Virus record (IMG/VR): IMGVR_UViG_3300026184_000250
Location: 1 to 9,244 of that record
Length of the DNA stretch: 9,244 nucleotides
Strand: one strand, 5' to 3'
How positions within the stretch are numbered: the first letter of the stretch is position 1; every line of letters begins with the position of its first letter. The notes beneath the pieces were generated by a model, which was not told the origin of the DNA, did not search any database, and was given only the letters and a program-made list of their open reading frames with translations. This document shows, in pieces, positions 2,996-8,948 of the stretch. Position numbers and translations under genes: made by a program.

Positions 2996-4678
2996 CTACC
3001 ATTCATCAGGCCATCCAGCCGAGCCTGCATAACCTCTCTGTACTGACTGAGCATTTCTGCATACTATAGCAATAGCACCAGCGTCGTGATGGTCATCTGC
3101 ACCTACCACTAAGATTCCACTCTTGCTCATAGGATTTCTACGGATATTCTTACACTGGCTCCAGAATCGTATGTCCTGACAGTCTATATGTTCAAGGTGT
3201 CTACTAACCTCAGTAACCATATAAGGCTTAGTGGATAGATTAGTCTGCCAGCCTATTGCTTTTACAAGCTTACCAGTTCTTACATCCTCCCTATAGTATA
3301 GGTCAGGATAATCTCTAAGATGACTAACTATATCTAGATTATCTTCTGGAGCTATTACCGCATTATTGTAGTAATGTGCTACTTCCTTCATCAGCAGAGC
3401 CATTTCCCACTCATCATAAAAGCCTGCTAGTGTAGCACAATGCTGCATAACTGGAGGAATTTCCTTATCATCCTTACTTTTATAGCCCTCAAGAAAGTGC
3501 CATACATGACCTACTGACTCAGACGTTTTCCCTTTGCCTGGGTCTATAGATACTATATAACCTAAACTATCTTCTCTGTCACACCAGATATCTAATGTAG
3601 CAGATATAGTATCTTTAGTTCTTGAGTCAGTAGCTACTATATTCTTCTGGCTTTTAGCGGGTATACAGTAGTGTATCTTATCAACTATAACATCAGAGCT
3701 GTAAGCTTGGTCTCCTGCTACCAGAAAGCAATTCTCATCATCCTCAGGAAATTCCTGCTCAAATAGAAGAACAGTATCGCCACTTCTTCTAAGGCTAGCT
3801 ATCTCAGCTTTCTTATACCTTCTCCATCTAAGCTTAGCCATAGCATCCTGTTCAGACATATCATAGATGTCCATGAGAACCTGCATTAACAGTACTTCAT
3901 CTGACTGGATATTAGATAGTGGGTCTTTATTGTCTTCATCTAGGCAGAATGGGTCTTCAGCATACATAATATACTCTGGTTGAATATACCAAGGATAGAA
4001 GTGGTGCCTATAGACTGATTTGGCTACAGAAGTTCCTTCCTTAGCTGCTCTATACATCTCACAGAAATCATTATCTTCTCCATTAGGAGTAGATAATACT
4101 CTTATTTTAGTTCCAGGCTTAGCAGGAACTCTCTGAGCAGCTGATGCAAACACCAATTCATGCGTTCCTTCAAACCAGAATCCGTACTCATCTAGTAGTA
4201 GATTATGTATTGGCTCTCCCCTACCAATAGTATAGCTCCTAGAGCTAAAAATATACATGATAGAGTAGAATGGATGCTTAGTATCCTTAGTTACCCATGT
4301 TAACTCCTCAGCGCTTTTATGCTCAAGCTTAGGAATAGTAGGAATCCTTCTTTCCAGAAACTGATGAAACCGCTTGGCTTTGATGATAAGACGCTTAGCA
4401 TTGGTCTCATCATAGCTAATAATAACTGATACAGTTCCACTAAGAGTTATATTATCAAGATAGAAATCAGCTAGATGAAGGGATGTTGCCCCTACAGATG
4501 CTGGCTTAACATAGATATCTCTAAATGTAGAAGTCTGAAGCATATCTAGCTGAATAGGATTAAGGATGAACGGAACTAATCTTCGTTCCTTATCCTCTAT
4601 CTGGAGTAAGGACTCCATAGTGAGCCGTCTATCTGAGAATAAAGCTTCAGCAGCTTCATCCTGCGATATAGTCTGCAT
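2996..4678 (-). CDS. terL: Terminase large subunit, 560 aa
   Basis: Adenine-binding LNPIQ, deviant P-loop VKPASVGATS, Walker B LLLDEYGFW preceded by GRG, motif III STPNG, FEQEFPE linker, and RNase H-like acidic residues (SIDPGKG, APEDN, ADDHHD). SD AGGAG 5 nt before ATG. Confidence 0.93.
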   Translation of the reverse strand: MQTISQDEAAEALFSDRRLTMESLLQIEDKERRLVPFILNPIQLDMLQTSTFRDIYVKPASVGATSLHLADFYLDNITLSGTVSVIISYDETNAKRLIIKAKRFHQFLERRIPTIPKLEHKSAEELTWVTKDTKHPFYSIMYIFSSRSYTIGRGEPIHNLLLDEYGFWFEGTHELVFASAAQRVPAKPGTKIRVLSTPNGEDNDFCEMYRAAKEGTSVAKSVYRHHFYPWYIQPEYIMYAEDPFCLDEDNKDPLSNIQSDEVLLMQVLMDIYDMSEQDAMAKLRWRRYKKAEIASLRRSGDTVLLFEQEFPEDDENCFLVAGDQAYSSDVIVDKIHYCIPAKSQKNIVATDSRTKDTISATLDIWCDREDSLGYIVSIDPGKGKTSESVGHVWHFLEGYKSKDDKEIPPVMQHCATLAGFYDEWEMALLMKEVAHYYNNAVIAPEDNLDIVSHLRDYPDLYYREDVRTGKLVKAIGWQTNLSTKPYMVTEVSRHLEHIDCQDIRFWSQCKNIRRNPMSKSGILVVGADDHHDAGAIAIVCRNAQSVQRGYAGSAGWPDEW

Positions 4679-5782: not shown

Positions 5783-5811
5783 AGTATAACATTGTGTACT
5801 AGTGTTGTCAA
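5783..5811 (-). promoter_or_regulatory. Sigma70/sigmaA promoter for the packaging operon, leaderless or nearly so
   Basis: TTGACA (5811-5806), 17-nt spacer, TGn-TATACT (5788-5783). ATG follows 8 nt later with no SD. Confidence 0.8.
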
Positions 5812-5858: not shown

Positions 5859-5887
5859 TTGACAACTATATCCTGATATGATATAAT
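5859..5887 (+). promoter_or_regulatory. Consensus sigma70/sigmaA promoter, leaderless
   Basis: TTGACA (5859-5864), 17-nt spacer, TGn-TATAAT (5882-5887). ATG 5894 is 6 nt downstream. Confidence 0.88.
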
Positions 5888-6336: not shown

Positions 6337-6791
6337 CTGTCTGTCGTAAAACTGTTCCTAAGTGTGCTTACTGCGGAGAACCTATACACTTGGGGGAGAT
6401 AATGGTAGCTGGCAGGATATGGAAGACTAGAGATGGAAAGGTAAGGAGATTTGTAAAGAACTTAAGATGGCACGGACAGAAGATAGTAAACCCAGAAGAG
6501 CCTCCAATATGCTGCTGGCTAGAAGCAGGTCTAGAGTATCTACGAACTCACCCAAAAGAAGAGACAAGAGGAAGAAAGCAGCTTCAGCTAACAAAAGCAC
6601 AAAAAATAGAAAGGTCAAAGATATCAAGACAAAGGGCAAGGTTAGTCCAAAAACTAAAGACACTAATGGAAGTTCCCCTAGCAAATCAGGAGCAAAAGGA
6701 TATAAACGATATAATAAAGATAGGAAGCCAGATAGAACAGTTGAAAGAGAGGATAATACCACTAGGAGGACTGCCTCCGAACTGGGAATAG
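6321..6791 (+). CDS. Zn-finger plus coiled-coil protein, about 156 aa, probable ATT start
   Basis: The frame is open from 6306. GAGGAG (6307-6312) lies 8 nt before ATT 6321. The extension beyond TTG 6390 supplies RKTVPKCAYCGEPIHLGE, completing a CxxC...WH...C Zn site. Confidence 0.65.
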   Translation: MDIWLTVCRKTVPKCAYCGEPIHLGEIMVAGRIWKTRDGKVRRFVKNLRWHGQKIVNPEEPPICCWLEAGLEYLRTHPKEETRGRKQLQLTKAQKIERSKISRQRARLVQKLKTLMEVPLANQEQKDINDIIKIGSQIEQLKERIIPLGGLPPNWE

Positions 6792-7135
6792 AATGGATAG
6801 GAGATTATTGCCCAGACAATAAACCCCATAACTTAATATGTATATATGAGTTGCATGGCGGAAGCTTATTTAGGTGTAGTAATTGTAGAAAGTATATATG
6901 GCTTCCTACATTTATTAAGGATGCTGCTAAGCTCGATAGTCTCATTGACAGCTATGGAACTACTACTGGGTATTGCAAGTATCTTGATACTAATAGAAGT
7001 GCTAAGATGCTAGTAGCTAAGCTGCAAGACCTATGGTATGCTAGAGCTAAGATTAAGGATGATAGGAAGTTTACTAAATTGGTAGTTAGAACTATGGAAG
7101 ACAGCGAGTATGATAGGAGGAACAATGGCACTTAA
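6782..7135 (+). CDS. Hypothetical Zn-binding protein, about 117 aa, start uncertain
   Basis: The C-terminal part of ORF 6467..7135 looks coding (CPDNKPH...CSNC). AGGAGG 6764-6769 precedes in-frame CTG 6782 and ATA 6788, which overlap the upstream stop. Confidence 0.55.
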   Translation: MGIEWIGDYCPDNKPHNLICIYELHGGSLFRCSNCRKYIWLPTFIKDAAKLDSLIDSYGTTTGYCKYLDTNRSAKMLVAKLQDLWYARAKIKDDRKFTKLVVRTMEDSEYDRRNNGT

Positions 7136-7583: not shown

Positions 7584-7752
7584 CAATTTTACAAATCCAA
7601 ATTCTGCGAAGAGACATAGTTATAAAGTATCCTCACCAAAGTTGCCTGACCGTATGGGTGGTGTTCTTTCATTTAGGACATAACCATATGGGAGCAATAT
7701 CCTTAGGAATAAATCATACAAGAACAGGCTTATCAAAACATACCGAGCAAGG

Positions 7753-7766
7753 CGAACATATGTTCT
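7753..7766. promoter_or_regulatory. LexA/DinR SOS box 1
   Basis: CGAACATATGTTCT is a perfect GAAC-N4-GTTC palindrome 1 nt upstream of a -35 hexamer. Confidence 0.8.
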
Positions 7767-7767
7767 A

Positions 7768-7796
7768 TTGACAAACGGTTCTCGATATGGTATGAT
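7768..7796 (+). promoter_or_regulatory. Sigma70/sigmaA promoter
   Basis: TTGACA (7768-7773), 17-nt spacer, TGn-TATGAT (7791-7796), followed by SD AAAGGAGGT 7802-7810. Confidence 0.85.
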
Positions 7797-7815
7797 ATAC
7801 CAAAGGAGGTGTGCC

Positions 7816-7989
7816 ATGACAGGGCAGGAACTAAATACCGAGTGGTGTCGCCGAATGGACATCACAACTAAAAGCATGATACAATGCCGAGAACAGGGTG
7901 CTGTATCACAAGAGTACCTCGATGGGTTCATTGAGGCAGTTAAAACGAGCATGAACCTATTGGAGGCAATCCTCACCGAGCAGCAATAG
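7816..7989 (+). CDS. 57-aa acidic helical hypothetical protein flanked by SOS boxes
   Basis: AAAGGAGGT lies 5 nt before ATG 7816. The ORF-track start at 7768 is the TTG of the -35 hexamer. Confidence 0.75.
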   Translation: MTGQELNTEWCRRMDITTKSMIQCREQGAVSQEYLDGFIEAVKTSMNLLEAILTEQQ

Positions 7990-7996
7990 GATGATT

Positions 7997-8023
7997 AGAA
8001 CATATGTTCCGAGCAAAGGTTCT
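7997..8023. promoter_or_regulatory. LexA/DinR SOS box 2 plus an adjacent degenerate box
   Basis: AGAACATATGTTCC (7997-8010) has the same 12-bp core as box 1. CGAGC-AAAG-GTTCT (8010-8023) has one mismatch. Confidence 0.72.
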
Positions 8024-8056
8024 GTTAATTTCCTAGAACATTATGTCAACTATCCC

Positions 8057-8085
8057 TTGACAACTCAAACCGAGTATGGTACAAT
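8057..8085 (+). promoter_or_regulatory. Sigma70/sigmaA promoter
   Basis: TTGACA (8057-8062), 17-nt spacer, TGn-TACAAT (8080-8085). Confidence 0.85.
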
Positions 8086-8093
8086 CTGATTAC

Positions 8094-8163
8094 ATGATGG
8101 AATCACAGACCATCATTGGTACTGGTAAAGTGGCAACAGTACCGGCACCTTAACAATTAAATA
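8094..8163 (+). promoter_or_regulatory. Structured 5' leader: two hairpins plus a boxA-like motif
   Basis: Stems ATGATGG/CCATCAT (8094-8116) and GGTACTG/CAGTACC (8118-8143), then GCACCTTAACA (8145-8155), 9/11 identical to rrn boxA GCTCTTTAACA. Confidence 0.55.
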
Positions 8164-8180
8164 AAGAAACGGGAGGTACA

Positions 8181-8750
8181 ATGGCAAACGGAAAACAGAA
8201 GCAAGCACAAGCCGAACCACAGGATTCAGTTGCACAGGAGACAGTCACTGAGGAACAGCCATCACAAGAGCAACTCAAATCCCAACTCCAGCAGGCATTG
8301 GCTGAGAACGACTGGAAGGCCGTAACCAAGATAAGCCGCCAGATAGACCAGATAGCCAAACAACAGGAAAAGGTTGAACTGGATGCCAAGCGGCAGGCAT
8401 TGGTGGCAGTGGAGAATCTCGTAAAGGAAAGTATCATGCGAGTAATAACTCCACTTTATGACGCTGGAGAACTTGACAAGGCAGATGGTATCTGGCTATC
8501 CTGGGACTTTGGTGAGCAAGTCCCAACTGTTCGACTGACATTCAGGGCAACAAGGACACCTAAGGCAGGTGGTGGCGGTACAGGCAAGAAGTTCGATGTT
8601 AGCACCGACTCATTGCTGGAGAAGTATGGAGGTGAGATATTCGACTCTGAGACAGGCCAGACCTTCAGGGAAGCATACAACTCCAATACTGACAAGAACT
8701 TCAGGTATGGCCTAAGGACGAAGTTGCTCAAGAAGGACGGTATCATATAG
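8181..8750 (+). CDS. 189-aa protein with coiled-coil N-terminus, basic Gly-rich linker and small C-terminal domain; putative DNA-binding protein
   Basis: SD GGGAGGT, with its own promoter and terminator. Function is inferred from architecture only. Confidence 0.85.
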   Translation: MANGKQKQAQAEPQDSVAQETVTEEQPSQEQLKSQLQQALAENDWKAVTKISRQIDQIAKQQEKVELDAKRQALVAVENLVKESIMRVITPLYDAGELDKADGIWLSWDFGEQVPTVRLTFRATRTPKAGGGGTGKKFDVSTDSLLEKYGGEIFDSETGQTFREAYNSNTDKNFRYGLRTKLLKKDGII

Positions 8751-8776
8751 TACCAGACCAGAACCAATAAGAATAT

Positions 8777-8808
8777 GGACTGCAAGTTGCCAGCAGTCCT
8801 TTTCTTTT
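8777..8808 (+). terminator. Intrinsic (Rho-independent) terminator
   Basis: GGACTGC-9 nt loop-GCAGTCC followed by TTTTCTTTT, 26 nt after the stop at 8750. Confidence 0.85.
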
Positions 8809-8918: not shown

Positions 8919-8948
8919 TTGACATGAGATAGGGTAGTATGATATAAT
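8919..8948 (+). promoter_or_regulatory. Sigma70/sigmaA promoter, leaderless
   Basis: TTGACA (8919-8924), 18-nt spacer, TGn-TATAAT (8943-8948). ATG 8955 is 6 nt downstream. Confidence 0.82.

What the first reader, a model, noticed from the sequence alone, without database searches (positions are those of the whole stretch)
7753..8808. Host-LexA-wired two-gene switch: SOS boxes, a 57-aa peptide and a silencer-like protein
Seen: the identical core GAACATATGTTC occurs twice, bracketing the 57-aa gene, each upstream of a consensus promoter. There is a degenerate box (8010-8023) and extra AGAAC/GTTCT half-sites (7663, 7721, 7778, 8035). No CI-like gene is in the window. Known: GAAC-N4-GTTC is the LexA box of Bacillota, Actinomycetota and Chloroflexota; tectivirus GIL01 maintains lysogeny with host LexA plus the small co-repressor gp7; coliphage 186 uses the LexA-controlled antirepressor Tum. 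Inference: a lysis/dormancy or damage-sensing switch in which host LexA gates an uncharacterised antirepressor or LexA modulator and a DNA-binding effector.
Basis: partly seen in the sequence, partly recalled or inferred. Interest (0 to 1): 0.75.

Follow-up and report, generated by a model that had tools for sequence, protein, structure and literature searches.

The report
LexA-type operator pair in uncultured phage

Summary
GAACATATGTTC occurs exactly twice (7754-7765, 7998-8009; 0 of 200 shuffles give any copy). Each copy lies upstream of a near-consensus sigma-70 promoter. Across 39 distinct relatives, perfect GAAC-N4-GTTC is 56-fold denser in the 800 nt upstream of the 189-aa homologue than elsewhere, so these are real operators.

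- Family-wide, the site is a 16-bp dyad, TAG[A/C]ACA-nn-TGT[T/G]CTA. C replaces the LexA-critical A in 38% of half-sites.
- A second dyad class (TAGTAC-N4-GTACTA) sits beside it at 14-bp pitch in several relatives.
- The 57-aa gene has no homologue anywhere and resembles neither GIL01 gp7 nor any solved structure.
- The 189-aa protein is a conserved orphan family with no silencer or DNA-binding match.
- A complete relative (43.9 kb) carries DNA polymerase A and no integrase or repressor, so it looks virulent.
- The host is unknown.

Best reading (about 0.4): a host LexA-type repressor gates an early-gene cassette. Main rival (about 0.35): an unidentified phage-encoded or other host regulator. 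The conserved output gene also has a structured RNA leader.

The parts
7587..7665 (+). Conserved non-coding block at the start of the intergenic region: TTTTACAAATCC..TCT, TAGTTATAA, CAAAGTTGCCTGACCGTATGGGTGG. Function unknown.
   Evidence: Seen in most relatives. GACCGTA is 13.8-fold enriched upstream of the 189-aa homologues.
7754..7765 (.). Box 1, class I dyad GAACATATGTTC. With flanks it reads GCGAACATATGTTCTA, which matches 13 of 14 positions of CGAACATATGTTCG. It ends 2 bp before the -35, so its centre is about -43.5 if the transcript starts about 7 nt after the -10 (inferred).
   Evidence: L015 has the same box and -35 junction, 23 identical bases.
7768..7796 (+). Promoter P57: TTGACA-17-TATGAT with an extended TG.
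7816..7989 (+). 57-aa ORF with a GGAGG ribosome-binding site at 7805-7809. It is a lineage-specific orphan in a variable slot, predicted as a three-helix bundle.
7998..8009 (.). Box 2, class I dyad GAACATATGTTC, centred about -88 from the inferred P189 start. It occupies an orthologous position in seven aligned phages.
   Evidence: In alignment A5 the columns AG-ACA-ATG are invariant.
8011..8022 (.). Box 2b, GAGCAAAGGTTC (one mismatch), 13 bp centre to centre from box 2. The orthologous site in L015 is a perfect GAACAAAGGTTC.
8035..8048 (.). AGAACATTATGTCA, a box-like element with one extra central base, 8 bp before the -35. Conserved in L015, L021 and L008, and repeated twice in L018.
8057..8085 (+). 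Promoter P189: TTGACA-17-TACAAT with an extended TG. The -35 is invariant in seven relatives.
8094..8156 (+). Structured 5' leader. Hairpin 1 is 8094-8116. Hairpin 2 is 8117-8144 with the apical motif AGTGGCAAC (8129-8137). GCACCTTAACAA follows at 8145-8156.
   Evidence: Fold energy -20.3 kcal/mol, z = -2.4. The motif occurs 28 times, in 27 of 39 relatives, always inside a hairpin whose stem sequence differs. No Rfam match.
8181..8750 (+). 189-aa ORF with GGGAGG at 8171-8176. It is the conserved output gene. The model shows a disordered N-terminus, a long helix (residues 29-94), a beta hairpin, a Gly-rich basic loop and a small helical C-terminal domain with invariant D171, K172, N173, R175 and R179.
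8777..8808 (+). Intrinsic terminator: GGACTGC, a 9-nt loop, GCAGTCC, then TTTTCTTTT. It makes the 189-aa gene a single-gene unit.

Best explanation
The two palindromes are operators for a dimeric sequence-specific repressor. They belong to an operator array that this family of uncultured ~44-kb phages keeps upstream of a conserved single-gene unit (the 189-aa gene).

In this phage both operators carry the A/A version of the dyad, which is identical to the Gram-positive/Chloroflexota-type SOS box. The most likely binder is therefore the host's LexA, or a LexA-family winged-helix protein of the host.

Proposed mechanism (inferred):
- In an undamaged cell, a dimer on box 1 (centre about -43.5, abutting the -35) blocks RNA polymerase at P57.
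- Dimers on box 2, box 2b and the box-like element (about -88, -75 and -50) dampen P189.
- After DNA damage the repressor is cleaved. P57 then fires, and since I saw no terminator before P189, its transcript probably reads through and adds to 189-aa expression.

The 57-aa ORF is exchangeable cargo in this slot, not a conserved part of the circuit. The 189-aa gene has a second, RNA-level control through its conserved leader hairpin. This is an early-gene cassette of a virulent-looking phage, not a lysogeny switch.

Shown: the sites, the promoters, their conservation and their geometry. Inferred: who binds, and the direction of regulation.
For: - The core appears twice exactly, with 0.00 copies expected by chance. 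Box 1 with its flanks matches 13 of 14 positions of CGAACATATGTTCG. CGAACN4GTTCG is quoted as the B. subtilis consensus in PMC3091678; the central ATAT is from my own knowledge.
- Perfect GAAC-N4-GTTC occurs 15 times in 31.2 kb upstream of the homologues against 5 times in 585 kb elsewhere. That is 56-fold, and 12 of 39 relatives have one.
- Box 2 occupies an orthologous, invariant position in seven phages whose 189-aa proteins are 49-63% identical to the window's.
- The motif stays the same while the phage proteins diverge to 31% identity, and its distribution is patchy. No phage gene cluster tracks it. This fits a conserved host factor better than a fast-evolving phage protein.
- The half-site variants seen (GAAC, GTAC) are the ones known for LexA of Gram-positives and cyanobacteria. 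GCAC matches the Fibrobacter LexA box as I remember it (unverified).
- The promoters are bacterial sigma-70 type with strong GGAGG sites.
- Precedent exists: GIL01 promoters are run by host LexA.
Against: - Family-wide, the second base of the half-site is C in 36 of 94 half-sites. The dyad classes (AA 15, AC 28, CC 4) fit free mixing of A and C. Clostridial LexA sites instead vary at GTTC to GTTT, and as I recall B. subtilis LexA needs GAAC.
- The flanks T(-2) and A(-1) are strongly conserved, giving a 16-bp site.
- Up to 5 dyads per region (6 counting one-mismatch boxes), direct AGAACA half-site arrays, and a second dyad class at 14-bp pitch are unusual for SOS boxes.
- Box 2 lies well upstream of its promoter.
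- The phage looks virulent, and I found no precedent for LexA control of early genes in a virulent phage.
- The host is unknown. The only two genome hits are MAGs titled 'uncultured archaeon', and archaea have no LexA.
Confidence: 0.4

Rival explanations
1. The dyads are operators (and the half-sites iteron-like sites) for one or two regulators that are not host LexA. Candidates are an unrecognised phage-encoded DNA-binding protein among the conserved early proteins (133 aa, Cys-rich ~111 aa, 157 aa, 192 aa, 189 aa) or another host transcription factor. On this reading the identity with the LexA consensus in this phage arises because both of its sites carry the A variant of an A/C-tolerant half-site.
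For: - A and C are used almost freely at the LexA-critical base, including four GCAC..GTGC dyads at syntenic places.
- There are two sharply separated dyad classes. Class I has 47 dyads, class II has 20, and only 4 are mixed. This implies two specificities.
- Class I and class II dyads sit at a fixed 14-bp pitch.
- Arrays reach 5 dyads (6 counting one-mismatch boxes), and direct AGAACA repeats are present.
- The promoter-proximal dyad sits at about -43.5 whatever its class. GIL01 gp6, a phage LexA-domain homologue, binds at that same position, to GaCACAnnTGTGaC.
- Box-negative relatives carry other repeats in the same region.
Against: - No gene cluster co-occurs with the boxes.
- The putative recognition helix of the 189-aa protein is the same in box-positive and box-negative phages.
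- No HTH or LexA_DNA_bind hit is on record for the called genes of a complete relative or of the other fetched loci, apart from one HTH_23/HTH_28 gene in L011.
- No relative of gp6 was found among 2,982 ORFs.
- A chance match of a 6-bp half-site to the LexA half-site is about 1 in 4,096.
Confidence: 0.35
2. Dual control as in GIL01. Host LexA binds the class I dyads, and a second factor (a LexA paralogue or a phage winged-helix protein) binds the class II or degenerate dyads next to them.
For: Class I and class II dyads are adjacent in L018, L031, L032, L033, L035 and L043. GIL01 P3 combines LexA boxes with a gp6 site. lexA duplications with diverged motifs are documented.
Against: The window itself has no class II dyad. 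No gp6 or gp7 relative was found.
Confidence: 0.15
3. The repeat-rich region is a replication origin or another DNA-level element, and the palindromes are structural features rather than transcriptional operators.
For: Many kinds of repeats fill the same region in all relatives: AGAACA arrays, CTGCAAC and TGAGTGAGCAT repeats.
Against: The proximal dyad keeps a fixed junction with the -35 in several lineages. Box 2 is aligned with the P189 promoter in seven phages. No initiator gene was recognised.
Confidence: 0.07
4. Chance repeat with no function.
For: None beyond the small size of the motif.
Against: 0 of 200 shuffles give even one exact copy. Enrichment is 56-fold and the position is conserved in relatives.
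Confidence: 0.01

Closest known systems
Tectivirus GIL01 regulation by host LexA with gp7 (co-repressor) and gp6 (LexA-domain activator)
   Same: GAAC-type boxes are paired with weaker neighbouring sites at sigma-A promoters. A small phage gene sits in the regulated unit. One dyad is centred near -43.5, as the gp6 site is.
   Different: No relative of gp6 or gp7. The boxes lie upstream of the promoters, not downstream of the start site or of the -35. The genome type differs: ~44 kb, terminase and DNA pol A, with no sign of lysogeny.
Chromosomal SOS boxes of Bacillota (CGAACN4GTTCG) and cyanobacteria (AGTACWNWTGTACT)
   Same: The window's boxes equal the Bacillota core. The class II dyads of relatives resemble the cyanobacterial box.
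   Different: Family-wide A/C ambiguity at a critical base, conserved TA flanks, tandem arrays at 14-bp pitch, and direct half-site arrays.
LexA-controlled antirepressors of temperate phages (coliphage 186 Tum type)
   Same: A small gene lies behind a LexA-type box.
   Different: There is no CI-type repressor for it to act on. The 57-aa product has no family match and is not conserved.
H-NS / Lsr2 / Rok / MvaT xenogeneic silencers
   Same: The predicted layout of the 189-aa protein is a long N-terminal helix, a flexible Gly-rich basic loop and a small C-terminal domain.
   Different: No sequence, profile or fold similarity.
Phage phi29 early promoters wired to host Spo0A (from my own knowledge, not checked here)
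   Same: A virulent phage whose early promoters would carry binding sites for a host global regulator.
   Different: Different regulator and motif. The comparison is only an analogy for why a lytic phage might read host state.

Membership tests
Gram-positive-type LexA (SOS) box | Dyad GAAC-N4-GTTC with an AT-rich centre | tested here: met
   Two exact GAACATATGTTC copies. Box 1 with its flanks matches 13 of 14 positions of CGAACATATGTTCG.
Gram-positive-type LexA (SOS) box | Placed so that the bound dimer interferes with RNA polymerase | tested here: inconclusive
   Box 1 ends 2 bp before the -35. Box 2 is 48 bp upstream of the -35 of P189.
Gram-positive-type LexA (SOS) box | GAAC/GTTC kept at orthologous sites | tested here: not met
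   36 of 94 half-sites are GCAC and 4 dyads are GCAC..GTGC. The window's own sites are perfect.
Gram-positive-type LexA (SOS) box | The host encodes a LexA that recognises this motif | not testable with these tools
   Host unknown. The only genome hits are two MAGs titled 'uncultured archaeon'. The promoters are bacterial in type.
Gram-positive-type LexA (SOS) box | LexA binding and induction by DNA damage | not testable with these tools
   Needs EMSA and reporter assays.
GIL01-type LexA/gp7/gp6 switch | A small protein homologous to gp7 | tested here: not met
   No BLASTP alignment at E <= 100. No phmmer hit below E = 0.39 among 2,982 ORFs. No PDB fold match.
GIL01-type LexA/gp7/gp6 switch | A phage LexA-domain homologue (gp6) | tested here: not met
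   Best phmmer E = 1.2. No LexA_DNA_bind family on record for any called gene.
GIL01-type LexA/gp7/gp6 switch | Temperate life cycle maintained by LexA | tested here: inconclusive
   A complete relative has no integrase, repressor or partition gene recognisable by Pfam. The window's own genome is incomplete.
LexA-controlled antirepressor (186 Tum type) | A cognate CI-type repressor and a related antirepressor | tested here: not met
   No CI-like gene in the window or in the complete relative. The 57-aa product has no family hit.
Xenogeneic silencers (H-NS, Lsr2, Rok, MvaT) | Sequence or profile membership | tested here: not met
   No such Pfam or NCBIfam hit for the protein or for 35 diverse family members.
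Xenogeneic silencers (H-NS, Lsr2, Rok, MvaT) | The DNA-binding domain fold | tested here: not met
   Foldseek against PDB and BFVD gave nothing at E <= 0.001. The profile search of PDB gave only weak HSP90 noise.
Xenogeneic silencers (H-NS, Lsr2, Rok, MvaT) | An oligomerising helix, a flexible linker and a small basic domain | tested here: inconclusive
   The AF2 model has this layout (pLDDT 76, pTM 0.36). The layout alone is not specific to silencers.

The most novel reading that the evidence does not exclude
A family of virulent, DNA-pol-A phages from sediments reads the host's DNA-damage state through arrays of LexA-family operators of two specificities (GAAC/GCAC and GTAC/GGAC). That is, through two LexA paralogues, or through LexA plus an unrecognised partner. 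The arrays time an abundant, novel nucleic-acid-binding protein that also regulates itself through a conserved RNA leader hairpin.
Probability: 0.2. Interest if true: 0.7.

Novelty: new variant of a known kind. Interest (0 to 1): 0.45.

Why it matters
If host LexA is the binder, this would be a lytic-type phage that couples early genes to the host SOS state. That link is so far documented mainly for temperate phages. It would also point to a Gram-positive-type or Chloroflexota-type host for a phage family that has no cultured relative.

The family-wide logo gives a ready-made natural mutational series for the half-site (A, C, T or G at one position, in two classes). Independently of LexA, the work defines three things:
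- a conserved orphan protein family (about 205 clusters at 50% identity);
- a covarying RNA leader;
- a precise set of operators that can be tested with simple EMSA and reporter assays.

If the binder turns out to be a phage protein, the finding is an ordinary operator system whose match to LexA is coincidental.

Tried and rejected
- **Near relatives among cultured phages.** None by DNA, nor by the 189-aa or the 589-aa protein. The terminase gave only 21-31% identity.
- **L004.** It is 100% identical to the window over the region, so it adds no information.
- **Family libraries.** Pfam, PHROGs and NCBIfam on the window's ORFs gave nothing above their thresholds.
- **The 189-aa protein.** No PDB profile, Foldseek PDB or Foldseek BFVD match. 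A profile search of 1.84 billion representatives found only same-sized family members, and a sample of 35 diverse ones had no Pfam domain.
- **The 57-aa product.** No homologue, no fold match, not gp7.
- **The 189-aa protein as the box binder.** Rejected as the leading candidate, because its C-terminal helix does not vary with box presence.
- **Gene presence versus box presence across 39 loci.** No convincing partner. The best P value was 0.003, for a shadow ORF inside the terminase gene.
- **Other searches.** Rfam on the window gave no hit. tRNA scans for host clues found one tRNA-Ile in a distant relative. RNAalifold on a MAFFT alignment of the leader failed because of indels, so I replaced it with per-sequence folding.
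- **Literature.** I could not confirm the Fibrobacter LexA box, so that point stays as memory only. I found no paper on LexA boxes at the early promoters of virulent phages.
- **An extra perfect box in L032.** It lies inside a coding region and is probably incidental.
- **Not used.** The metagenome scan: a 16-mer would return mostly chance hits.
Full report
**What the window is.** The window is the whole contig IMGVR_UViG_3300026184_000250.
- The minus strand carries a large terminase (2996-4678). Its best matches to annotated terminases are 21-31% identical, E = 3e-17.
- Next to it is a 589-aa gene that I take to be the portal from size and position only. It has no family match.
- From 5888 onward the plus strand carries small genes of unknown function.
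- G+C is about 41%.
- No cultured phage is close.

**The observation.** GAACATATGTTC occurs at 7754-7765 and 7998-8009 and nowhere else, even at up to two mismatches. None of 200 dinucleotide shuffles contains a single exact copy.
- Box 1 is followed after two bases by TTGACA-17-TATGAT (7768-7796).
- Box 2 is followed by a one-mismatch box (8011-8022), then a box-like AGAACATTATGTCA (8035-8048), then TTGACA-17-TACAAT (8057-8085).
- The 57-aa ORF (7816-7989) and the 189-aa ORF (8181-8750) both have strong GGAGG sites.
- A hairpin followed by a T-run at 8777-8808 ends the second unit.

So the description is correct, with one change. Only box 1 touches its promoter. If transcription starts about 7 nt after the -10 (inferred), box 1 is centred near -43.5. 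Box 2, box 2b and the box-like element are then centred near -88, -75 and -50.

**Relatives.** The 189-aa protein defines an orphan family.
- It has 67 close metagenomic homologues, and about 205 clusters at 50% identity among 1.84 billion representatives. All are 110-260 aa and none is named.
- I collected 39 distinct loci. L004 is identical to the window and adds nothing.

**Conservation of the boxes.** The boxes cluster upstream of the 189-aa homologue in many relatives.
- Perfect GAAC-N4-GTTC occurs 15 times in the 31.2 kb made up of the 800 nt upstream of each homologue. It occurs 5 times in the other 585 kb. That is 56-fold, and 12 of 39 phages have at least one.
- Box 2 is orthologous in seven aligned phages, with AG-ACA-ATG and the -35 invariant.
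- The box 1 / -35 junction is identical over 23 bases in L015, although the gene behind it there is unrelated.

These are functional operators, not a chance repeat.

**What the site looks like across the family.** Here the LexA reading weakens.
- The commonest form is TAGAACATATGTGCTA. The second base of the half-site is A in 58 and C in 36 of 94 half-sites.
- The dyads split AA 15, AC 28, CC 4. That is close to free mixing.
- T at -2 and A at -1 are strongly conserved, which gives a 16-bp dyad.
- Widening the pattern to GNAC-N4-GTNC gives 71 sites upstream (2.0 per kb) against 0.115 per kb elsewhere.
- It also reveals a second class, TAG[T/G]AC[C/T]-nn-[A/G]GTAC[C/T]A, with 20 dyads. This class almost never mixes with class I inside one dyad: 4 mixed against 67 pure.
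- The two classes lie side by side at 14-bp pitch in L018, L031, L032, L033 and L035, and both also occur, further apart, in L043. L036, L039, L045 and L047 have class II only.
- The promoter-proximal dyad keeps the CTA-TTGACA junction whatever its class.
- Some relatives have up to 5 dyads (6 counting one-mismatch boxes) and direct arrays of AGAACA half-sites.
- Box-negative relatives carry other repeats in the same place.

**Comparison with known LexA sites.**
- CGAACN4GTTCG (B. subtilis) and AGTACWNWTGTACT (cyanobacteria) are quoted in PMC3091678.
- Clostridial sites vary as GAAC-N4-GTTT, not GTGC (PMC4234289).
- LexA motifs differ among phyla but are stable within them, and lexA duplications go with motif divergence (PMC8565304).
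- Class I (A form) therefore equals the Gram-positive box, and class II resembles the cyanobacterial one.
- I recall a Fibrobacter LexA box of the GCAC-N4-GTGC type, but I could not verify it.
- GIL01 gp6, a phage homologue of the LexA DNA-binding domain, binds GaCACAnnTGTGaC centred at -43.5 (PMC6182141).

The dyads thus look like targets of LexA-family winged-helix domains in general. That does not say whether the protein is host LexA.

**Who could bind.**
- No phage gene cluster follows the distribution of the boxes.
- The most conserved helix of the 189-aa protein (TDKNWRYAIRQKLLK) is the same in box-positive and box-negative phages, so this protein is unlikely to be the specific binder.
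- None of the 2,982 ORFs from the relatives resembles GIL01 gp6 or gp7.
- No LexA_DNA_bind domain is on record for the called genes. The only HTH hit is an HTH_23/HTH_28 gene in L011.
- The motif is unchanged while the phage proteins diverge to 31% identity, and its distribution is patchy. This fits a conserved host factor somewhat better than a phage protein.

On balance I place host LexA, or a LexA-like host protein, first at about 0.4. A non-LexA regulator is second at about 0.35. Dual control gets 0.15, an origin-type element 0.07, and chance 0.01.

**The two genes.**
- *The 57-aa product.* It has no homologue sharing even three 5-residue words among 5.8 billion proteins and no family hit. 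A confident three-helix model (pLDDT 86.5) has no PDB match. There is no alignment to gp7. L015 has an unrelated 67-aa gene in this slot, L002 an unrelated 42-aa ORF, and L005 nothing. It is exchangeable cargo under the regulated promoter.
- *The 189-aa protein.* It models as a disordered N-terminus, a long helix, a beta hairpin, a Gly-rich basic loop and a small helical domain (pLDDT 76). Nothing similar is in PDB or BFVD, and there are no Pfam hits across the family. The invariant basic residues suggest nucleic-acid binding, but that is inference. 'Silencer-like' is not supported.

**Life style.** A complete relative was tiled by L008, L058 and L059. It is 43,945 bp, and its 189-aa homologue is 53-55% identical to the window's.
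- It has the same divergent layout as the window.
- The plus-strand block runs through AAA_25, AAA_24, a helix-hairpin-helix (HhH) domain protein, a methyltransferase, a dCMP deaminase and DNA polymerase A.
- The other strand is a structural block that includes a 2088-aa protein.
- No integrase, repressor or partition gene is recognisable.

A lysogeny or dormancy switch is therefore unlikely. If LexA is involved, it gates early accessory genes of a lytic-type phage. I found no paper describing that.

**Host.** The host is unknown.
- The five near-consensus TTGACA-17-TATAAT promoters with an extended TG, together with the GGAGG sites, point to a bacterium with Gram-positive-like expression signals.
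- The only two genome-collection hits are contigs in MAGs titled 'uncultured archaeon'. I regard this as a probable binning artefact, but it is the main external fact that could overturn the LexA reading.

**A second layer of control.** The leader of the 189-aa gene forms two hairpins. The second hairpin carries AG[TC]GG[CT]AAC at its tip. This motif occurs 28 times, in 27 of 39 relatives, always inside a hairpin whose stem sequence differs. GCACYTTAACAA often follows it. It has no Rfam match. It is more widely conserved than the boxes, and it suggests post-transcriptional, possibly autogenous, control.

**Verdict.** I class it as a new variant of a known kind, with interest 0.45.

Noticed in passing
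window 8094-8156; relatives as listed: The leader of the 189-aa gene is structured. A hairpin at 8117-8144 carries the apical motif AGTGGCAAC, followed by GCACCTTAACAA. The motif AG[TC]GG[CT]AAC occurs 28 times, in 27 of 39 relatives, always in a hairpin with a different stem sequence. In some relatives the stem contains a GGAGGTG. No Rfam match.
   Followed up: partly
window 7587-7665: A conserved non-coding block (TTTTACAAATCC..TCT, TAGTTATAA, CAAAGTTGCCTGACCGTATGGGTGG) is shared by most relatives. GACCGTA is 13.8-fold enriched upstream of the homologues. It may be a promoter of another class plus a conserved transcript start.
   Followed up: no
L018, L031, L032, L033, L035, L036, L039, L043, L045, L047 (positions): A second dyad class, TAGTAC-N4-GTACTA, resembles the cyanobacterial LexA box. 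It sits next to class I dyads at 14-bp pitch in several relatives and replaces them in others. It is absent from the window.
   Followed up: partly
window 5783-5811 (-), 5859-5887 (+), 8919-8948 (+): Three consensus promoters end 1 to 7 nt before the first or second ATG of their ORFs (5792/5774 on the minus strand, 5888/5894, 8955). This suggests leaderless mRNAs. The two box-associated promoters, by contrast, have leaders with GGAGG sites.
   Followed up: no
window 6390-6791 and 6467-7135: Two overlapping ORFs in different frames both form conserved BLAST clusters. The basic N-terminal part of the 222-aa ORF is probably a frame shadow. The real second gene, which is Cys-rich, probably starts near 6800.
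   Followed up: no
L017 and L018 (genome contigs): The only genome-collection hits are contigs of two MAGs titled 'uncultured archaeon' from different studies. One of the contigs is a 43.8-kb, apparently complete phage genome.
   Followed up: no
L011 1-4132; L014 1-2970; L059 1-223: A giant gene of 2024-2320 codons lies next to the portal-like gene and has no Pfam hit. The family also carries DNA pol A, dCMP deaminase, an N6/N4 methyltransferase, a LAGLIDADG endonuclease and, in L006 and L007, a pyrimidine-dimer glycosylase.
   Followed up: no
L008 9534-9600, L020, L021, L024; L014, L030, L042: L008, L020, L021 and L024 have direct arrays of AGAACA half-sites spaced about 12-15 bp apart. L014, L030 and L042 have unrelated repeat families (CTGCAAC, TGAGTGAGCAT) in the same intergenic region.
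   Followed up: no
L008 4890 and L015 5061: GAACATATGTGC occurs at about the same place inside the terminase gene of two relatives. It is probably there because of the coding sequence. The window has no copy.
   Followed up: no
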